DNA from: Rebecca billardiae RCC1528
Taxonomy: Eukaryota; Protista; Haptophyta
Length of the DNA: 64,000 nucleotides
Direction: 5' to 3'
NCBI GenBank assembly: GCA_965240325.2
Contig: OZ251223.1
Location: 682,001-746,000, forward strand
Shown: piece after piece, positions 1,809 through 28,522 of the stretch
Layout: each line of letters starts with the position of its first letter
How positions within the stretch are numbered: the stretch's first letter is position 1
Position numbers and translations under genes: made by a program
The notes under the pieces: generated by a model
Seen by the model: the letters and a program-made list of their open reading frames with translations, nothing else
Databases searched by the model: none
Told to the model about the DNA's origin: nothing

Positions 1809-3026
1809 TTAACCGTCGGCGTCGGAATCGGGCGAATCGGCGTCGTCGTCACCGCGATGCCGACGTGTGCGGCGGTGGCGCTCATGATGGTGATGATGTC
1901 TCCTGCGGCTGTCATCGTCGGCCGCCTCAGCGCTCGTCGCATCATCATCGCTGTCCATGTCGAATCGGCCGGTAGCATTGCCGAGCTGCGAAAGAGGCGG
2001 TGACGGTGGTGGTGGTGTCTCAAGAATGCCGTCGAAGGAGCCCGTCTTGTTGCCTCCTTCGACGTTTGGTGGTCGGTCTTCCGCGCCATCTGGCGAAGAC
2101 GTGCGCGCGTGCCGTGTGCCCAGCATGACGACGACGAGGATGCCACCCAGGATGATGCACAGCACGGTGCAAGCCACAACCACGAGGCCGATGCGTCTCG
2201 ACCGTTTCACGGTCGAGCCCCTGCGGCTGCGCTGCTTGAGACCGCTGGTGCCCTGTCGCCTCAGCTTGCGCTTCGTGTCACCACCCGGCCCTTCACTCCG
2301 TGGCGAAGGCGCGGAGAGCTCGACCCCTCGACTCGCGGGTGCCGTCTTTTGCAGCTGGGCCTCCTCATCCTCACCACCCTCGTGTTCAGGCCCCCCATCG
2401 GCACCCGGCGCCGTCCATGTTGGCGCCGGCAACGCCGCAGACGCCACCGAGCTCGAGGAGGCTGGTGTGTGCATCATCTGAGCCGGCACCCCAGTGGCCT
2501 CCGGGGACGCCGCGCCCAGGTCGTCGATGGCTGGCAGGGGAGGGCGCGCACTGGACGTCACGGAAGCGTCTGGCTCGGCCCATGCCGACACCCGCAAGGC
2601 CTCCGACGCTTTGGGATGCTCGGACGTCGGCGTGTGCATTGGCCTCGGGGTCTCAGGTGCATTCCGGAGCTCGGGGCTGGGCCGGGCGTGCATGGCGGAC
2701 CGGCTAGTGACAATGGGTGCGGGGCTCAATCCTTGCAGCGCGTCCAGCCGCTGCGCGAGCTCCAGTGCTTCGCACTGCTCGTCCATGCGGATCGCCCGTC
2801 GCTCGAGCTCGGGGAGGTCACCCTCTTTCTCCCGCAGCTCGTCGAGCAGCGCATGTGCGCGAGCGCGCAGCGTGTGCACTTGTCTCGAGACTGACGCCTT
2901 GGAGGCACCATCTGGCGTGGACGTCACCTTCAGCATGTCGGCGCGCGCGATGAGCGCCAGAATGTGCTCTTCGATGAGGCCGAGTGAGCGCCTGCGATAA
3001 TCGGTGGGGACGAGGCGAGCAGCCAT
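1809..3026 (-). CDS. Hypothetical protein: N-terminal coiled coil, low-complexity middle, one TM helix near the C-terminus
   Basis: Long ORF with likely ATG at 3026 (MAARLVPT). TM segment IGLVVVACTVLCIILGGILVVVML is preceded by a basic patch. Confidence 0.6.
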   Translation of the reverse strand: MAARLVPTDYRRRSLGLIEEHILALIARADMLKVTSTPDGASKASVSRQVHTLRARAHALLDELREKEGDLPELERRAIRMDEQCEALELAQRLDALQGLSPAPIVTSRSAMHARPSPELRNAPETPRPMHTPTSEHPKASEALRVSAWAEPDASVTSSARPPLPAIDDLGAASPEATGVPAQMMHTPASSSSVASAALPAPTWTAPGADGGPEHEGGEDEEAQLQKTAPASRGVELSAPSPRSEGPGGDTKRKLRRQGTSGLKQRSRRGSTVKRSRRIGLVVVACTVLCIILGGILVVVMLGTRHARTSSPDGAEDRPPNVEGGNKTGSFDGILETPPPPSPPLSQLGNATGRFDMDSDDDATSAEAADDDSRRRHHHHHERHRRTRRHRGDDDADSPDSDADG

Positions 3027-3715
3027 GTTCAAAAGTGGGACGGGACGGTGGGAATCCGCATACCGGGCCGCCGCCCCGGCCGGTAAAACCAAACAAAAAA
3101 GATGAGGAGCCCCGCACTCGATCAACGGTCACCGTCGTCGTCGGCAGGACCACCATGTCCCTTGGTGAGCAGGACCATGCAAAGCCATGGACTGGGACTG
3201 TTAGGTCGCACCGGCGGCGATGGCAGTATGGCACGGTGTGAGCCTTGATAGAATACTGCTGCTGAATGCCGCTGACGGCCCGTCACTGCCGATCACCGGT
3301 CAGGCGGCGAGGCAGGAAGGCAGGCGGAGCCGTTCTGGCACGTAGACGGCCCCGGGCATCGCCGCCCGCCGTCATCGGGGGCCACGCGCCGACACGCCGC
3401 GCCGTGCGCGATCTGCGGTGCGACAGGCGACGGCTGATCGGTCGACCGGGCCACCGCGAGCTGTGTGAGAGTGCAAAAGGTATGGTCGCCAGCCGGACCT
3501 CCCATGCGTGAGAGCTGGCTGGGACAAGTGTCGCATATCCACAATGCCAACTGCGCTGCGACCATCGCCACGGTGTCCGATCGTGATTGCTGTGGGCAGA
3601 ATGGCCTCGCGATCGAGCCAACGCGCAGCCGAGCGCGGCGGTCTGCCGCCGCGTGTGCCATCAGCACAGCGCGCGCGTGCGCGCTGCCGAGTGGTGGCCA
3701 TCAGAGAGACCGCGC

Positions 3716-5594
3716 CTAACTCAAGTTCTTGGCGATGAGGTCGTACCGCGGCACGGCGGTGATGTCGCCGTGCACGACAATCGTCGGCGGCGACTTGAGC
3801 ATGCGCTTGGCGACGTCCGAGAGCTTCTCCGGCGTGACGGCCTGGATCTGCTTGCACAGCTCGTCCGGATCGATGCGCTTGCCGTACGTGGCGACCTGCC
3901 GGCCGATGTCCTCGAAGAGGATCGACGAGCTCTCCAGGTTCATGTGCAGCGACGTCATGAGCTGGTTCTTGGCGCGCTTCACCTCGTCCGCAGCAAATGG
4001 CTTGCTGCCCATCGCCGCCAGCTCCTCGACGAGCACCGACGTGAGCGAGCCGATGTTGGCCGACGGCGCGGTGCCGTGCAAGAGGAAGAGGCCAGAGTCC
4101 GAGTGCACCGAGTTGGCCGTCGACGCGTTCATCGCGTACGGGTACTTGTTCAGCACGTTGAGGTAGAGGCGCGAGAACATGCCCTTGCCTGCGCACGCAC
4201 ATCGCGCAGCGGCGCGCACGGAGCACGCATGAGCCATCGGTGTGGGCAGGGCCGGGCCGCCGCCGCGCGCTGCCGCCGCACGGATCGCGGGCGCCCGCGC
4301 GAGGCGCGCAGGCTGCGGTCGCGGCGGCGCGCGCGTACCCGGACCACCCGCGGAGAAGGAAGCCCCGCCGCCCATGAGCATGTTGAGCACGCACACCGGG
4401 ACGAAGTCCGGGTCGTTCCACCCGACGCCCTCCAGGCCGACGCTGCGCGCACGGGTGGCGTGGAGCCAGGGCGCGCGCGCAGGTTGGGGTGCGGGCCCGA
4501 GGGTGACGGGGCGTGCGCGGCGCGCGGCGGAGCGGCGGGGCATGGCGACGCGAGAAATACGCACCCGACGTGCGTCAAGCCCGTCTCGGCGACCGCGCGG
4601 TACTCGCCCCCGCTGTACGTCGACTTGGGGGCCGGCGCTGGCGCCGAGCCCTTGGGCACCGAGCCAAAGGCTGCCTCGGCCGCTTTCACGAGCTCGGCGT
4701 GTTCGACGCCGGCGGCGGCGAGCACCATGTTGGCCGGCGTGTAGTGCGCCTCCATGAAGCCGCCCAGCACGTCCGGCGTGAGCTGCCCCAGCCCCTTGGC
4801 CGAGCACATGAGCGGCATGCCCAGCCCGCCGCCCGAGTAGCCCGCCGTGTGCGCCTTCTCCGTGAGCAGCAGCTGCGGGTTCTCGACGAGGTCGGCGATG
4901 TCGTTCGCGTAGAAGGCCTTCTTCTCGGCGAGCTCCCACTCCACGAAGTTCCCCTCGAGCGTGGTCTCGGCGAGCATCTCCACGAGGTCCTTGGCGTTCG
5001 GCTTGAGCGCCATGGCGGAGTAGATCATCTGCTCGCGGCCCGCAGTCGCGTGCACCTGCGCACCGATCGCCTCAATGTCGCGCACCATCTTGAAGTGGGA
5101 CCTGCTGCCCGTGCTCTGCGCGGCGCGGCGGCGCGGGGGTGCGACGGGGTCCCACCAAGGCACAGATGCTCAGCTGGCCGTCGGGGGGCGCGGATCCGGC
5201 CAAGAGCACGCGTGCAAGCGCTTCGGAGCGTCGCGCGAATCGGCCCGTGCGCCGCGCCGCGTACCGTGAACGCCATGAGCTGCAGCATGTACGACGCGCC
5301 CGAGTTGGCCGGCGTCTCGAAGCGGGAGCCGGTGTTGACCACCACGCCCACCGTCGCGACCGCCGAGGTGTCTGCCTGGCTCACCACCTTGAGGCCATTG
5401 GGCAGCGTCGTCACCTGCGTCTTTGGCGTGGGGATCAGGCCCTGCGGCGCCGGAGTCGAGTTGTCCTCGAACAGAGGCACGTTGAGTGGCGTGCCCGGCA
5501 CCTGTGCCAGCTCCGGAGCCCCCCAGGCCCACCGCCGCGCCGCTGGCGCCGCTGCTGCGCGCAGCGCGTGCGCTCGGCCAAGCTGCAGAGCCAT
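3716..5594 (-). CDS. PMPCA: Mitochondrial processing peptidase alpha subunit (M16 family), 4 exons
   Basis: Presequence MALQLGRAHALRAAA; TQVTTLPNGLKVVS; GSRFE; glycine-rich loop GGGASFSAGGPG|KGMFSRLY; EDIGRQ. Three GT-AG introns (about 5115-5263, 4443-4564, about 4188-4338) join the frames. Confidence 0.93.
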
Positions 5595-5762
5595 CGATCC
5601 CCGAGGTGCCACACTTCGCAGTCGGGCGCCGAGACACCAATGACGCATCCGGACTCATCAGGGCTTCCGGATCATCCCGAAAGCATCGGACTTTCATACT
5701 TCACGGCCAGCCACGGCCGGCGATGGCGGCCTCGTGCTGACGTGGACAGTGGTGGCTGGGAA

Positions 5763-6683
5763 ATGAATCCTCGAGCACGGCTCGTGCTCGTGCTCGCGTG
5801 GCTGTACGCCCCTGCGTGCTCCCCGTCGGCCCGGGGCGTGCTTTCCATCGCTCACCCGTCGGCCGGGGAGACTCTCCACTACGCGGCAGGCTCAAGGTCG
5901 CTCAACGTGTCCCTCCAGTACGAGTATGAGCTCGTCGCGTTGCCGACCGCGCCTCTGCGTGTGTGCATCGAGCTGCAGCGCGCGCAGGCCGCGCACGACT
6001 TCGCGTGGTTTGCAGAGGGCTGCTTCGAGACGACCCAGCCTATCACGCTCCTGCTCCCGTCGTCGCCTGCCACGTTCCGCATCCACGCCGCCCTTGCTGA
6101 CGACAGCATCGATCCCCTGGCGCGCACGACGGTCGACTTCACTGTTGCGCCCGTCCCTCCGTTCGAGCCGGCGTACGGATGGCGACCAGTGCCGCCGGGT
6201 GCCGGCGTCCCTGCTGGCCTCGACGTGCGCATGCACCTGAGCGGCGAGGGATCCGAGGCGAAGATCCCCGAGCCCTTCAGGCTGCAGCTCAGCCTGGACG
6301 CGCCTGTCCAGGGCATCTTCCGACACGACGTGCACCGGCACACGACGGTCCATCAGCTGCTCGACGCGCTCGACGAGTTCGCCAAGAAGCGGCGGGAACG
6401 TCACCCGAGCGAGTCCGCGACGCCTTTCTGCTCTGAGCTGCTTCTTGCGAGTGGCGACGGAGCTCATCCGCATGGCGCCCACGCCAGCGCCGCGAGCGGC
6501 GGCTCTGATGTCGATGCGGCATGGATCCCGCTGCTCGAAGCCGCGACCGCGGAGGAGCTGGAGTTGTTCACGCTGCAAGAGAGGCTGCGCGTGCGCTGGC
6601 ATGCGTGCGCACCAAGCAGCGGGGGCACGTCCATTGCTGCCCACTCGCAGGCACACCCTCATCAAATGCCAGTCGAGCTGTGA
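5763..6683 (+). CDS. Signal-peptide protein containing a SIL1 N-terminal-like motif
   Basis: MNPRARLVLVLAWLYAPACSPSARG leader; FEPAYGWRPVPPGAGVPAGLDVRMHLSGEGSEAKIP resembles the SIL1 N-terminal motif. Confidence 0.7.
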   Translation: MNPRARLVLVLAWLYAPACSPSARGVLSIAHPSAGETLHYAAGSRSLNVSLQYEYELVALPTAPLRVCIELQRAQAAHDFAWFAEGCFETTQPITLLLPSSPATFRIHAALADDSIDPLARTTVDFTVAPVPPFEPAYGWRPVPPGAGVPAGLDVRMHLSGEGSEAKIPEPFRLQLSLDAPVQGIFRHDVHRHTTVHQLLDALDEFAKKRRERHPSESATPFCSELLLASGDGAHPHGAHASAASGGSDVDAAWIPLLEAATAEELELFTLQERLRVRWHACAPSSGGTSIAAHSQAHPHQMPVEL

Positions 6684-24328: not shown

Positions 24329-25429
24329 ATGGCGTCGCCGACGCGCACGCTCGGTGTCGCACTCGCGGCCGCATCGGCGTTATTCTTTGCTATGCAAGGG
24401 CTCGCCGTGAGCTTTGCGGCCGCGCGTGGCGTCACAATCTGGCAAATCGCCTCCATCGTTGGCGGAGGCAGATGCGTTCTCGCATTTGCACTGACGTGCA
24501 CGCGGTCCAACTGGAGGAGACACGCCGTGTGCGTCGGACGAGACGGCTGGTTTGTTGCTCTCTTCGCCGTATGCCAGGGGTTGGCCGCGCTTCAAGTTCT
24601 GACCGAGTTTACAGCGCTGTCCATCCTTCCTGTTGGGGAGTCGACGGCGATCGCGTTCAGCGCGCCGATATGGAGTGCACTCATTGCGCGCCTCTGCCTT
24701 CGCGAGCAGCTTGCTCCGACTCATGGCGTGGCCGCTATTGGCGTCGTCGTGGGTGTCGCGCTCATTGCACTCAATGGCAACGAATCACCGGCCCCATCAA
24801 TCGCACATGACGCACGAACGCACGTGGGTGGCCTTGCGTGCGCTGTCTTGACCGCCATCGCCATCGGTGGGGAGACTGTGGCGCTGCGAGCCGTCAGCGC
24901 GGCTGAGGTCCCAGCGGTCGTCTGCACTGCGTGGTCTGGATTAGGCATCTTCTTCACGGCAGCGCTGGTCGCTACGGCCCGCGCAGAGCCAATTCTACCC
25001 CAATTCTCGTCATCTACGACTACGTGGCTCATGCTCACAGCGGGCGCCACCATGTCCACGGTCGCGCAGACTCTTCTGGCAGCAGCACTGCAAATGCTCG
25101 AGGCAGGGCCGGTGACCGTGCTGAGTGCGCTAGAGGTCTTCTTCGCTTTCTTTGGGCAAGTGTTGGTGATGCATGCGCCGGTTCGGGTGCGCGCTTTGGC
25201 AGGCGCTATCCTCATTTGCGTGTCGGTACTTGTGATCAGTCTTCACACGGCTGTCAGCGCTGATGCGGGGCGGCACAAAAGTCCACTGAGCCACAGGCAC
25301 ATGGCAGTGGGAACCAGGCCCGCTGAAGGGACATCTGATCATGGAGCTGCTGGCACGCAACGCACAATCTCGACTGCTGCTGTGAGGCAGGATGGGAGTA
25401 CCAAGTCCCCGCTACTTGTGAAGCCTTGA
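24329..25429 (+). CDS. EamA/DMT-family transporter (about 10 TM)
   Basis: Two EamA-like halves: ALSILPVGESTAIAFSAPIWSALIARLCLREQL and ALQMLEAGPVTVLSALEVFFAFF. Intronless and lower GC than its neighbours. Confidence 0.85.
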   Translation: MASPTRTLGVALAAASALFFAMQGLAVSFAAARGVTIWQIASIVGGGRCVLAFALTCTRSNWRRHAVCVGRDGWFVALFAVCQGLAALQVLTEFTALSILPVGESTAIAFSAPIWSALIARLCLREQLAPTHGVAAIGVVVGVALIALNGNESPAPSIAHDARTHVGGLACAVLTAIAIGGETVALRAVSAAEVPAVVCTAWSGLGIFFTAALVATARAEPILPQFSSSTTTWLMLTAGATMSTVAQTLLAAALQMLEAGPVTVLSALEVFFAFFGQVLVMHAPVRVRALAGAILICVSVLVISLHTAVSADAGRHKSPLSHRHMAVGTRPAEGTSDHGAAGTQRTISTAAVRQDGSTKSPLLVKP

Positions 25430-25719
25430 ACATGCTGGCAGCATGTGGTGAATGCTGCGGGAATGTGGCGCGGATTGATTGCTGCAGGGAGTGATGCTGA
25501 TGACACTGGTGACTGGAGCCGTCCGTGGGCGGCGGTTCAACGGCAGTCTCATATGCAGTCATTGGTCGCGTCGTCATCGCCACTACTCGCACAAGGTGCT
25601 TGACTACTCTTCATATGTACTTCGTCACGAGTCCGGCAGCGCGGCGTCAACACTCGCCGTCGCGTCTCCGCAAGTCGACGGCGAGTGTCAGACGTGCACA
25701 TCACTGCATCGCATCATTC

Positions 25720-28359
25720 CACAGTGCCGGAAAACTGCTCAGGGTGACGTTTTAAGTTGTCCGCACCACTAGTCGAATCATCGGACAATTCTGAAGCGGT
25801 GCGCCTAAATTCGGCGCACCATAGGCGCGTCGAATCGTGGCACAGACCTTGGTAGCAGGCCACACCTGAGCGCGCTGCGCGCGCCGACGCGCGCTCGGCG
25901 CGGGCAAAAAATCATGCGCCGTTGGCATTACGCAGCCCCGCGCAGCGCTGTGCTCGAGCTCGGCGGCGGCGAAAGCGGGCGGGCGCACACGGCGGTGCCC
26001 GTGCGCGCTGCTCCGAGCGCAGCTGCGGCCACCCCGGCGGCATACCGCCGGTCGAGGGCACGAAAACCGATTTTTCGGGAAAATGCAGAGCAGCGGCGCC
26101 CGAGCGCGCCCGAGCTCGTCGCAGCACAGTCTCCTGGTGGCTGCGCCCCGTGAAGCCACGCCACGCGGGGCGCTGGCGTGCGCGTGGCCTGCGCCCACCG
26201 TGCGCTGCCCGATCATGGCCGTCGACCGCTCCGAGCGCCTCACCACGCGTGCTCGAGCCCACCGATACTGACGCCCGAGCACGGTGCCGGCAGCGCTCGC
26301 AGGTGGGCGTCGGAGAAAACACGCCGGCCGAACGAGCTTGAAGCGTCCGCCGCGATGCCAACGGCAGCGGACGACGTGCGCGCCACCTCGGCGCCAGTCG
26401 CCCAGCCCTTGCGCGGCGGTGCGGGCTCGCTCGTTCGCCGCCATCAGCTGCGCGCGCGCAGCCCGATCACTGCCCGCTGGTTCTGTTGTCGAGCAGCTGC
26501 GGCCTGCCACGCGCACTGCCGGACATTGAGCCACAGCGCGAGCACGCGCCTCGTCTGGCACGCGCGAGCACTCAGCATCGTGCGTGGCCACCATGACGCG
26601 CCCATCTGCGCCAGCAGCGATGAGCACGCCGCCGTTCAGCTCGCATCGGGCTCGCTCGCGACGCAGCAACGCGCGGCCGTAGCGGCAGCAGCGGCGCCGT
26701 CGAGCACGCGCAGCAAACAAATATGCAGCGCGGGCGAGTCGACGGTCTGGAAAATGCGCGATCACGCCACAGCAGGCTGGCAGAGCCCGCCCGAGCTGCA
26801 GCATGCCGTAGGTGCTGCCCCAAGCTCTCGACTGCCCGTAAGCGGCGGCATGTGCGGCGGCGCCGGCGGCGGCCATGCTGCCACGCCGTTGCGCGCCGCG
26901 GGGCGCCGTCGGCACCTCCGTGGTGAAGCGCACAGAGCTCGAGCCCACGGGGGCTGGCGACCGTCAAACCGACACCCCATGACGCGGGGCTGCGTGCGCC
27001 AGCTGCGCGCACTCCGTGGGCCCACCTAGCCCGCTCGAGCAGCTCGCCTTGGCTGCGCGCAGCGGCTCGAGCACACTGGTATGGGACGCCTGCCTGCGGT
27101 GCCGCCGAGCACATGCGGCCGACGGTCACTCAGCACGGGCGACTCGACGGCGGCGAGCAGGCGCGACGGCCTCGCCGCGCCGCGGAAAAGCCTGCCCGGG
27201 CTGCAGCACGCCGTAGGAGCAGCCCAGCGCCCTCCTCCGCCCTCCAGCTTCGGCGCGCGCAGCAGGCCCGGCGGCGGCCATGCTGGCGTGCCCAAGCATG
27301 AAGATGGGCGCGGCCGGCCGCGCCGTCGCAAAGCGCGCAGAACTCGAGCTCGGGGGGGCGGACGGCCGCCAAACTGGCGCGGCAGGACGTGGCACTGCGT
27401 GCGCCAGCTGCGCGCACCCGCTGCGCCCGCGTGGCCCGTGCGAGCGCCGCGCCTCGAGCACACGCAGCTGCTCGACACAGCCACGGCAGTGTGGCTTGTG
27501 CGCGTGCACGTGATCAGTCTCAGCTCTGAGGCGCGCGCTCAGGAGGGCTGCGGCCGGGCCGAGCGCGATCTGCGCGGACGGTACAGCCTGGCGGCTCATG
27601 CCAGCCAGCCCAAAGCCCGCTCCGCCATCCGCGTCATGGCGCTCCAGCCTCTCGCGTGCTGCGCTGCAGCCGCGCTCGGCAAAGACGTCGCCCAGCCCGC
27701 CTTGCACGCGGCTGAGCAGTGGCAGCCAGGCGAAGCGTCGTCGCGGGCGAGGCTGCGCTGGGTGATGCGGCTCGGGTCGGTGGGCAAGTCGCACCCCGCC
27801 GTCGGTCGCCTCCACGCCTCAGGCTCGCTCGAGGTCAAAGACAACTGCGCGGCGCGGCGTTTGCGCGGGCGGGCCGCGGGCGTGGCGGGGTGTACGCGTG
27901 CAATGTCACAGCCTCCCACACAATTTCAGGAGGGTGAGACGCACCGCCAGCGGCACCCGCACACAATCCCACCCTGCGCGAGCCACCTGCCGTGTCGACT
28001 GAAGCATCAGGCTCGGGCGCAACCGCGGGCGGCGCATGCAAGAAGCTCGCGAAACGCACCGCGCGCGCCGTGAGGGCGAAAGGAGTTAGGAGAGCACCCG
28101 TCAGGGCGGCGAGGAACTTGCCCAGCGCCACGCGGAAGACGACCCCAGCCCGCGTCGACGCATAGTCGGGCCCGCGAGCAGCCTCGTCGGTCTTCGCCGA
28201 GTAGATCGCGCCGCGAGCCGAGGCACCGCTCGTTTGAGGCTCCGTCCGCCGCGAAGTCGCGGCTTCCACCCGAGTTCCACTGTCCGGCCGAGACCGGATT
28301 CGCTGACTCGAGCTGCGGACCGTCCGAAGCGTCACGGAAAATTCCAATCCTGCACTGTG
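25720..28359. mobile_element. Non-autonomous CMC/Transib-like DNA transposon with CACAGTG termini
   Basis: Left end CACAGTGCCGGA-N12-GTGACG-N9-GTCCGCA; right end (reverse complement) CACAGTGCAGGA-N12-GTGACG-N9-GTCCGCA. Both flanks share TC. Confidence 0.7.
26731..27470 (+). repeat. Degenerate tandem duplication, 405-bp period
   Basis: cgggcga(g/c)tcgacgg at 26731 and 27136; tgcgtgcgccagctgcgcgcac at 26991 and 27396. Confidence 0.7.
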
Positions 28360-28434
28360 TCATCATCATTCATCATATATCGACATCGTCGACGACGCGT
28401 TACATGGCGATATGACTTATGACGAATATTAGCA

Positions 28435-28435
<1 letters not shown>

Positions 28436-28488
<53 letters not shown>

Positions 28489-28522
28489 CTCTATATATAT
28501 ATATATAGCAGCTATATATATA
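28436..28522. repeat. (TA)n microsatellite, interrupted
   Basis: Pure TA from about 28436 to 28487, interrupted to 28522. Confidence 0.95.

What the first reader, a model, noticed from the sequence alone, without database searches (positions are those of the whole stretch)
25720..28359. 2.64-kb element bounded by the V(D)J RSS heptamer CACAGTG with block-conserved, fixed-spacer TIRs
Seen: both ends start CACAGTGC and align without gaps over 46 nt (27/46 identical). Identity falls in three blocks (1-12, 25-33, 40-46) separated by divergent spacers of fixed length. No canonical RSS nonamer is present. The flanks share only TC (left tcattc, right tcatc). Known: CAC-terminated ends typify CMC-clade transposons (Transib, ProtoRAG, Chapaev, CACTA), and an RSS is conserved blocks plus a length-constrained spacer. 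Inference: a non-autonomous element of a Transib/RAG-like or unusual CMC family in a non-animal, probably algal, genome.
Basis: partly seen in the sequence, partly recalled or inferred. Interest (0 to 1): 0.75.

Follow-up and report, generated by a model that had tools for sequence, protein, structure and literature searches.

The report
Non-coding transposon of RAG1-fold lineage
This is one of about 65 nearly identical copies of a young, protein-less 2.6-kb jumping element in a GC-rich (probably pavlovophyte) alga; a related 6.2-kb element encodes an enzyme predicted to fold like the antibody-gene recombinase RAG1, but the family duplicates 2 bases on landing, so it is an unusual branch of a known transposon group, not a RAG ancestor.

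Summary
Window 25720-28359 is a real DNA transposon copy. Both ends start CACAGTGC, the 46-nt inverted ends match at 27/46 in three fixed-register blocks, and a 2-bp target duplication (TC) flanks it.

It is one of about 65 copies (134 termini) of a 2,633-bp family. The copies are 99-100% alike, lie on more than 25 contigs of the 72-Mb genome, and sit in AT-rich pockets. Fourteen of 16 copies checked have 2-bp duplications. I found no sign that it codes for protein.

A related 6,204-bp coding element lies at G000:C14:815838-822041. It shares the left 197 bp (89%), about 0.5 kb at the right (76-84%), the same end blocks in the same register, and a 2-bp duplication.

Its 795-aa ORF has no Pfam or PDB sequence match and about 12 relatives among 1.84 billion proteins, one cluster from Pavlovales. 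It is predicted to fold like the RAG1/Transib core (Foldseek E 4.5e-7; VIA Z 18.8).

Verdict: a non-autonomous member of an undescribed RAG1-fold lineage inside the CACTA-Mirage-Chapaev-Transib clade. It is not a Transib: the duplication is 2 bp, not 5 bp, the ends are symmetric, and there is no nonamer.

The scan had already reported other copies and the 6.2-kb element (s1-348504, s1-371982, s1-348445); I re-derived both here. Mobilisation in trans is inferred, not shown.

The parts
25718..25719 (.). Left copy of the 2-bp target-site duplication (TC)
   Evidence: 2-bp duplications of varied sequence flank 14 of 16 copies checked.
25720..25765 (+). Left terminal inverted repeat, 46 nt. Block 1 is CACAGTGCCGGA, block 2 is GTGACGTTT at positions 25-33, and block 3 is GTCCGCA at positions 40-46.
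   Evidence: It matches the left end of the 6.2-kb relative at 42/46.
25720..25914 (+). Left arm shared with the 6.2-kb coding relative (element positions 1-195; 89% identity to L052 501-697)
25915..27844 (.). Internal 1.9-kb GC-rich (about 73%) cargo with no similarity to the coding relative and no detectable coding signal
   Evidence: No Pfam match in six ORFs. tblastx against the relative finds nothing beyond the arms. No 3-base periodicity in substitutions. Indels of 1, 2 and 7 bp among copies.
26691..27479 (.). Two tandem units of 405 bp, about 70% identical (26691-27075 and 27096-27479), inside the cargo
   Evidence: (family D1)
27845..28202 (-). Right arm shared with the relative (element positions 2126-2483; 76% identity to L052 6194-6545). 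In the relative this region lies upstream of the conserved part of the first reading frame and is probably leader/promoter.
28081..28087 (.). Private 7-bp insertion of this copy (absent from the 17 other copies aligned)
28314..28359 (-). Right terminal inverted repeat, 46 nt. Block 1 is CACAGTGCAGGA, block 2 is GTGACGCTT, and block 3 is GTCCGCA, in the same register as the left end.
   Evidence: It matches the right end of the relative at 39/46.
28360..28361 (.). Right copy of the 2-bp target-site duplication (TC)

Best explanation
Window 25720-28359 is a young, non-autonomous cut-and-paste DNA transposon. It keeps only the two arms of a coding element: about 195 bp on the left and about 515 bp on the right, including the 46-nt inverted ends. 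Between them lies 1.9 kb of unrelated non-coding DNA.

Shown here:
- It has multiplied to about 65 near-identical copies.
- It lands in AT-rich pockets.
- It duplicates 2 bp of target.
- A 6,204-bp relative in the same genome (G000:C14:815838-822041) has the same end architecture and the same 2-bp duplication.
- That relative encodes a 795-aa protein predicted to have the RAG1/Transib core fold.

Inferred:
- A transposase of that lineage, supplied in trans, binds the three conserved end blocks. The source is the C14 element or a closer parent not in the assembly.
- Block 1 contains the cleavage-proximal heptamer CACAGTG. Blocks 2 and 3 are inner binding sites at fixed distance.
- The enzyme cuts at the heptamer border by the nick-and-hairpin chemistry known for RAG1, Transib and other CA...TG-ended elements.
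- It reinserts with a 2-bp stagger.

The lineage belongs to the CACTA-Mirage-Chapaev-Transib (CMCT) clade. It fits none of the named superfamilies by the sequence tests that the tools allowed.
For: Copy number and youth:
- 134 termini against 2 for the control, and 123 with the stricter pattern.
- 40/40 scored matches are 96-100% identical.
- Most copies differ from the consensus by 1-8 substitutions in 2,633 bp.

Transposition rather than segmental duplication:
- 2-bp duplications of varied sequence in 14 of 16 copies; the binomial P against 1/16 is about 1e-15.
- The copies lie on more than 25 contigs.
- Flanks are 34% GC within 20 nt, against 69% at 1.1-1.5 kb away.

Non-coding:
- No Pfam match.
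- No codon periodicity.
- Indels of 1, 2 and 7 bp.
- No translated similarity to the relative outside the arms.

The relative:
- Shared arms and end blocks.
- AT/AT duplication.
- It is the only intact gene of this lineage in the genome.

The enzyme:
- AF2 model with pLDDT 68.6 and pTM 0.66.
- All 48 best PDB matches are RAG1, HzTransib or BbRAGL, with best E 4.5e-7; the next unrelated match has E 0.27.
- VIA-align: RAG1 Z 18.8 (464 residues aligned, 5.0 A, model 42-763 to RAG1 460-1006), BbRAGL 15.8, HzTransib 14.7, P element 9.9.
- The nearest named language-model clusters are RAG1 RNase H/ZnC2/ZnH2.
- D161, D251, C311-x2-C314 and a GQE motif (E700) are conserved in relatives.

The CMCT definition is taken from PMC12730594.
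Against: - The shared arms are only 76-89% identical to the C14 element, while family copies are about 99.8% alike. C14 is therefore a cousin, not the direct parent.
- Its ends differ from the family's at 4/46 (left) and 7/46 (right) positions, some of them inside the blocks. Cross-recognition is plausible but untested.
- The C14 gene model is unresolved. There are three reading frames on one strand, separated by an 85-89% GC repeat.
- The fold evidence rests on a 14-sequence alignment and a medium-confidence model.
- No CACTA, Mirage or Chapaev structure exists in the PDB. A RAG1-like best match therefore cannot separate Transib kinship from general CMCT kinship.
- The catalytic glutamate is not settled: E700 is favoured by colinearity with RAG1, and E375 in a conserved HxxEN motif is the alternative.
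Confidence: 0.8

Rival explanations
1. Orphan family. The burst was driven by a closer parent element that is no longer in the genome or not in the assembly. The C14 element cannot move the family, so the copies are now immobile.
For: - Arms are 76-89% identical to C14, against about 99.8% among copies.
- The own-genome protein search finds no other intact gene of this lineage, only a fragment with a stop and a 29% paralogue.
- No longer element with the family's exact ends appears among the listed termini.
Against: - The copies are so young (0-8 changes per 2.6 kb) that loss of every parent copy since the burst would have to be very recent.
- The block positions shared by the family's two ends are also kept in both C14 ends.
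Confidence: 0.3
2. True Transib/RAG-like element, i.e. a member of the Transib superfamily with RSS-like 12/23 ends.
For: - The heptamer CACAGTG is identical to the RSS consensus.
- The best structural matches of the relative's enzyme are RAG1, BbRAGL and HzTransib.
- The nearest language-model clusters are RAG1.
Against: - The target duplication is 2 bp, not 5 bp.
- Both ends have the same spacing, with no nonamer.
- There is no sequence-level match to RAG1 or Transib by Pfam scan, PDB phmmer or a PDB profile search.
Confidence: 0.07
3. Ordinary CACTA/EnSpm non-autonomous element.
For: CAC...GTG termini. A short target duplication: 2 bp generally, and one copy fits 3 bp.
Against: - The coding relative has no Transposase_21 or other plant-type CACTA domain at E up to 1.
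- The termini are CACAG, not CACTA.
- The duplication is 2 bp in 14 of 16 copies.
- The genome scan for PF02992 found nothing, but its controls did not ring either, so that scan is uninformative.
Confidence: 0.1
4. The 2.6-kb unit is itself autonomous and encodes an unrecognised protein in its GC-rich interior.
For: Long open frames exist on both strands (up to 398 aa). All copies have the same length.
Against: - At 73% GC, long open frames are expected by chance.
- No Pfam match.
- No codon-phase bias in 99 substitutions of the most diverged copy (35/32/32) or between the two 405-bp units.
- Young copies tolerate 1-, 2- and 7-bp indels.
Confidence: 0.04

Closest known systems
Transib transposons and RAG1/ProtoRAG (HzTransib, BbRAGL, vertebrate RAG1)
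   Same: The terminal heptamer CACAGTG equals the RSS heptamer. The relative's enzyme is predicted to share the RAG1 core fold from the dimerisation/DNA-binding domain to the C-terminal domain (Z 18.8, 15.8 and 14.7). It has DDE-type acidic residues and a C-x2-C motif after the second aspartate.
   Different: The target duplication is 2 bp, not 5 bp. The ends are symmetric, with no 12/23 asymmetry and no nonamer. Sequence similarity is undetectable. I found no RAG2-like partner. A long acidic/Ala/Gly low-complexity insert lies at residues 485-599.
Mirage (CMC superfamily; 2-bp target duplications, from established knowledge of Repbase classes)
   Same: 2-bp target duplication and CA...TG termini.
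   Different: Transposase kinship could not be tested, because no Mirage reference sequence is reachable with these tools. As I recall, Mirage is described from animals, not algae.
EnSpm/CACTA
   Same: CAC...GTG termini, a short duplication, non-autonomous derivatives that outnumber the coding element, and conserved inner blocks near the ends.
   Different: There is no Transposase_21/DUF4218-type domain. The termini are CACAG, not CACTA, and the duplication is 2 bp, not the usual 3 bp.
ESTA and other recently named CMCT lineages (Kojima 2025, PMC12730594)
   Same: These are lineages that match RAG1 only by structure-aware comparison, with 2-bp duplications and CA...TG ends. The paper defines CMCT as making 2-5 bp duplications and sharing C(2)C and H(3-4)H motifs.
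   Different: ESTA is fungal and duplicates TA specifically. Here the 2-bp targets vary: AA, TG, TT, AT, CA, AC, TC, GA, TA.

Membership tests
CMCT clade (CACTA/EnSpm-Mirage-Chapaev-Transib, as defined in PMC12730594) | Termini 5'-CA...TG-3' | tested here: met
   CACAGTG...CACTGTG in the window copy, in all listed copies and in the 6.2-kb relative.
CMCT clade (CACTA/EnSpm-Mirage-Chapaev-Transib, as defined in PMC12730594) | Target-site duplication of 2 to 5 bp | tested here: met
   2 bp in 14 of 16 copies and in the relative.
CMCT clade (CACTA/EnSpm-Mirage-Chapaev-Transib, as defined in PMC12730594) | [quoted passage not shown] | tested here: inconclusive
   In the relative's 795-aa ORF, D161, D251 and C311-x2-C314 are conserved among relatives. 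H345-x3-H349 is present, but its first H is kept in only about half of the relatives. The glutamate is either E700 (conserved GQE) or E375 (conserved HxxEN). I could not inspect model coordinates.
Transib superfamily | 5-bp target-site duplication | tested here: not met
   2 bp.
Transib superfamily | RSS-like ends: heptamer plus spacer plus an A-rich nonamer-like block, with asymmetric spacers | tested here: not met
   The heptamer is present. Both ends align without gaps, so the spacing is symmetric, and there is no nonamer.
Transib superfamily | Transposase detectably similar in sequence to the Transib/RAG1 core | tested here: not met
   No Pfam match at E up to 1. No RAG1 or Transib chain by phmmer or by profile against PDB sequences. 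The similarity is at fold level only.
EnSpm/CACTA superfamily | Transposase_21 (PF02992)-type transposase | tested here: not met
   No match in the relative's ORFs. The genome scan was blank but uninformative because its controls were blank too.
EnSpm/CACTA superfamily | CACTA termini and 3-bp duplication | tested here: not met
   CACAG termini. 2 bp in 14 of 16 copies, and one copy fits 3 bp.
Mirage | 2-bp target-site duplication | tested here: met
Mirage | Transposase groups with Mirage transposases | not testable with these tools
Non-autonomous derivative of a coding transposon | Shares both termini and subterminal arms with a coding element but lacks its gene | tested here: met
   Arms of 195 bp (89%) and about 515 bp (76-84%) are shared with L052 501-6704. 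The interior is unrelated.

The most novel reading that the evidence does not exclude
The family and its 6.2-kb relative represent an independent, non-animal lineage of RAG1-fold transposases. It uses the exact RSS heptamer with symmetric, block-structured ends and a 2-bp strand-transfer stagger, and it was mobile very recently. If the C14 enzyme is active on these ends, the roughly 65 clean copies with known ends give a natural system to ask two questions. What sets spacer rules (symmetric against 12/23) in this fold? What sets stagger length (2 bp against 5 bp)? A phylogeny could also ask whether the lineage branches near the base of Transib/RAG1.
Probability: 0.25. Interest if true: 0.65.

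Novelty: new variant of a known kind. Interest (0 to 1): 0.45.

Why it matters
RAG1 and Transib are the best-studied case of a transposase becoming an immune-system enzyme. Outside animals, relatives are sparsely described. In the held library I found no paper that joins Transib or RAG1 with haptophyte or Pavlovales terms among the top results.

This alga carries a recently active family with RSS-identical heptamers, whose only coding relative has a RAG1-type predicted fold but a 2-bp stagger and symmetric ends. That widens the known range of end architecture and target stagger for this fold. It also gives a well-defined pair, enzyme gene plus about 65 substrates, for biochemical tests.

For genome annotation, it explains about 175 kb of otherwise unclassifiable GC-rich repeats that sit next to genes.

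It does not change the picture of RAG origins. It is a branch of a recognised clade, and the scan had already met it several times.

Tried and rejected
1. Longer elements with the family's exact ends. Every listed terminus pairs at about 2.6 kb. The 'unpaired' ends were full copies with a mutated partner end, one truncation (L034), one 91-bp stump followed by CT repeats (L031), or a copy with a nested insertion (L039).

2. The pattern CACAGTGCNGGAS, meant to catch other ends. It gave 12 hits against 16 for the control, all unrelated on inspection.

3. Genome scans with PF02992 and PF12940. Both were blank, but the control genomes were blank too, so they are uninformative.

4. Word-index protein searches with the 795-aa ORF, both whole and restricted to residues 1-440. 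Neither gave hits. The exhaustive search was needed.

5. GC3 profile as a coding test. It is uninformative in this genome; a control gene shows 0.65/0.56/0.65.

6. Folding the first reading frame of the relative (L052 5412-6125, minus strand) with 4 relatives. The pLDDT was 46.9, too poor for a fold search, so I ran none.

7. Comparison of the relative's coiled-coil frame with the N-termini of P0001 and P0002. No significant similarity.

I therefore could not read the ends of relatives in Pavlovales sp. CCMP2436 or in the metagenome contigs.

Each was searched apart, by reference.

Full report
**Observation**

The left end at 25720 and the reverse complement of the right end at 28359 both begin CACAGTGC. 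They align without gaps at 27 of 46 positions.

The matches fall in three blocks: positions 1-12 (11/12), 25-33 (8/9) and 40-46 (7/7). The spacers between them match at only one position in all. Beyond the heptamer, 20 of 39 positions agree; 38 of 100,000 shuffles of one arm reach that. There is no nonamer. The flanks share TC.

**It is a real, multicopy, young transposon**

- A pattern made from blocks 1 and 2 occurs 134 times in the 72-Mb, 41-contig genome, against 2 for the reversed control. The hits come in convergent pairs about 2,633 bp apart on more than 25 contigs.
- A search with the whole element scored 40 candidates, all full length or nearly so, at 96-100% identity.
- In an alignment of 18 copies, most differ from the consensus by 1-8 substitutions. 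The window's copy differs by one substitution and a private 7-bp insertion near 28081-28087.
- Flanks of 12 end pairs show a 2-bp duplication in 11: AA, TG, TT, AT, CA, AC, TC, GA, TA, TA, AA. One pair fits 3 bp.
- With further copies, the total is 14 of 16. Chance would give 1 in 16 each.
- The 20 nt next to the ends are 34% GC, against 69% at 1.1-1.5 kb away. The element lands in, or survives in, AT-rich intergenic pockets. In the window it sits between an EamA-like ORF ending at 25429 and a (TA)n tract at 28436-28507.

**It shows no coding signal**

- Six long ORFs have no Pfam match at E up to 1.
- At 73% GC, long open frames are expected in every frame.
- The two internal 405-bp tandem units (about 70% identical) show no codon-phase bias in their differences.
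- The same holds for the 99 substitutions of the most diverged copy: 35/32/32.
- Young copies carry indels of 1, 2 and 7 bp.
- GC3 is not a usable test in this genome.

**Search for the coding partner**

Every terminus listed belongs to a 2.6-kb copy. The apparently unpaired ones were copies with a mutated partner end, a truncation, a stump, or a copy with a nested insertion. A first attempt with a relaxed block-1 pattern gave only chance hits.

Notes from earlier agents of this scan then said that a 6.2-kb master exists (s1-348504, s1-348445). One title gave the layout CACAGTG, 17-bp spacer, GTGACGYTT (s1-341131). I used that layout as a pattern. It returned one new end, at C14:815838.

The locus (L052) holds a 6,204-bp element at L052 501-6704, with CACAGTG at both ends and an AT/AT duplication.

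- It shares element positions 1-195 with the family at 89%.
- It shares positions 2126-2483 at 76%.
- It shares the last 55 bp at 84%.
- Nothing in between is shared, at either DNA or translated level.

Its ends match the family's corresponding ends at 42/46 and 39/46. All four ends share positions 1-8, 10, 12, 26-30, 32 and 40-46, in the same register.

**The enzyme of the 6.2-kb element**

On its minus strand there are three real-looking reading frames, separated by an 85-89% GC tandem-repeat region. Each was searched apart, by reference.

The 795-aa frame (L052 3165-778) gave these sequence results:
- No Pfam family; the only hits are low-complexity ones to its acidic/Ala/Gly insert.
- No PDB sequence match, either alone or as a 14-sequence profile.
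- No relatives by the word-index search.
- In the exhaustive search of 1.84 billion representatives, 32 hits. About a dozen cover the core; the rest hit only the low-complexity insert.
- One related cluster holds a Pavlovales sp. CCMP2436 protein and MMETSP transcripts.

An AlphaFold2 model built on these relatives has mean pLDDT 68.6 and pTM 0.66. The core blocks score 75-95. The fold comparisons were:
- Foldseek against the PDB gives RAG1, HzTransib and BbRAGL as all 48 best matches, with best E 4.5e-7. The next hit is an unrelated protein at E 0.27.
- VIA-align gives RAG1 Z 18.8 (464 residues, 5.0 A, model 42-763 on RAG1 460-1006), BbRAGL 15.8, HzTransib 14.7 and P-element transposase 9.9.
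- The language-model look-up puts RAG1 RNase H/ZnC2/ZnH2 clusters among its nearest named neighbours. That is a lead only.

In the alignment, D161 lies on a predicted strand and D251 at the end of a strand. Both are conserved, as are C311-x2-C314 and a C-terminal GQE motif (E700, on a helix). H345-x3-H349 and an HxxEN motif (E375) are also present. Colinearity with RAG1 favours E700 as the third catalytic residue. I could not inspect coordinates, so this is open.

**Copy number of the coding element**

The assembly holds one full copy (C14). There is one truncated copy covering positions 2723-6204, which lacks most of the 795-aa frame (C27). There is also a 613-bp fragment with a stop (C7). 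A six-frame search with the core found only these and a 29% paralogue on C13.

**Mechanism**

Shown:
- Dispersed near-identical copies.
- 2-bp duplications.
- Shared arms and end blocks with a coding element.
- A RAG1-type predicted fold for that element's protein.

Inferred:
- A transposase of this lineage acts in trans on the family.
- It reads the three blocks at fixed spacing and cleaves at the heptamer border.
- It uses the nick-hairpin route established for RAG1, Transib and hAT-like enzymes.
- It integrates with a 2-bp stagger.

The arms are 76-89% identical to C14 while the copies are about 99.8% alike. C14 is therefore a cousin, not the direct parent. Whether it can still move the family is the main open point.

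**Comparison with known families**

[quoted passage not shown] The termini and the duplication fit. The motif test is only partly met.

- It is not a Transib. The duplication is 2 bp, not 5 bp. The ends are symmetric, there is no nonamer, and there is no sequence-level similarity.
- It is not an ordinary CACTA element. There is no Transposase_21 domain, the termini are CACAG, and the duplication is 2 bp.
- Mirage shares the 2-bp duplication, but its transposase could not be compared here.
- No CACTA, Mirage or Chapaev structure is in the PDB. The RAG1-like best match therefore says 'CMCT fold', not 'closest to Transib'.

**Novelty and verdict**

It is a new variant of a known kind: a non-autonomous family of an undescribed, rare, RAG1-fold lineage in a probably pavlovophyte alga.

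Other copies of the same family and the 6.2-kb element were already reported by this scan (s1-371982, s1-348504, s1-348445). One of those reports had not found the enzyme. Here the link was re-derived from sequence.

Limits:
- The fold of the first reading frame failed (pLDDT 46.9).

Noticed in passing
L039 (G000:C18:913962-918435), positions 3089-3919: One family copy carries a nested insertion of about 831 bp. Its inverted ends start CAGGGATGC and it has an 8-bp duplication, GACTCGAG. This looks like a hAT-type miniature element that landed after the family spread.
   Followed up: partly
L052 5409-6680 (minus strand), residues 194-397: The first reading frame of the 6.2-kb element is 28% identical (E 6e-16) to residues 117-317 of P0020, whose cluster holds MMETSP transcripts and a Pavlovales sp. 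CCMP2436 protein. In P0020 this domain sits directly before the C(2)C...HxxEN region that matches the 795-aa frame. It may be a second, diverged N-terminal half or the remnant of a second transposase gene. A fold attempt failed (pLDDT 46.9).
   Followed up: partly
L052 4283-5410 (element positions about 3783-4910): An array of tandem and inverted repeats, 85-89% GC, with a period of about 229 bp. It lies inside the 6.2-kb element, between its reading frames.
   Followed up: no
L056 (G000:C13:2815000-2824999); match at G000:C13:2821031-2821639: A distant paralogue (29% identity) of the RAG1-fold core lies inside a 1,677-aa open frame. An end-like CACAGTG followed by an A-rich stretch (AACAAAAACAA) lies at L056 7948, minus strand. 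It is probably a different family of the same clade.
   Followed up: no
L040 (G000:C1:4963787-4966420) and the neighbouring copy at G000:C1:4960044-4962678: Two family copies lie 1.1 kb apart. One is 96% identical to the consensus, and 77 of its 99 substitutions fall in element positions 2000-2600. This suggests a subfamily or a recombinant right arm.
   Followed up: partly
window 28436-28507: A (TA)n microsatellite of about 70 bp lies 77 bp to the right of the element, in a 32% GC pocket between GC-rich genes.
   Followed up: no
window 24329-25429 (+): A 366-aa ORF that looks like a multi-pass membrane transporter (EamA/DMT-like by eye) ends 290 bp to the left of the element. I did not scan it.
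   Followed up: no
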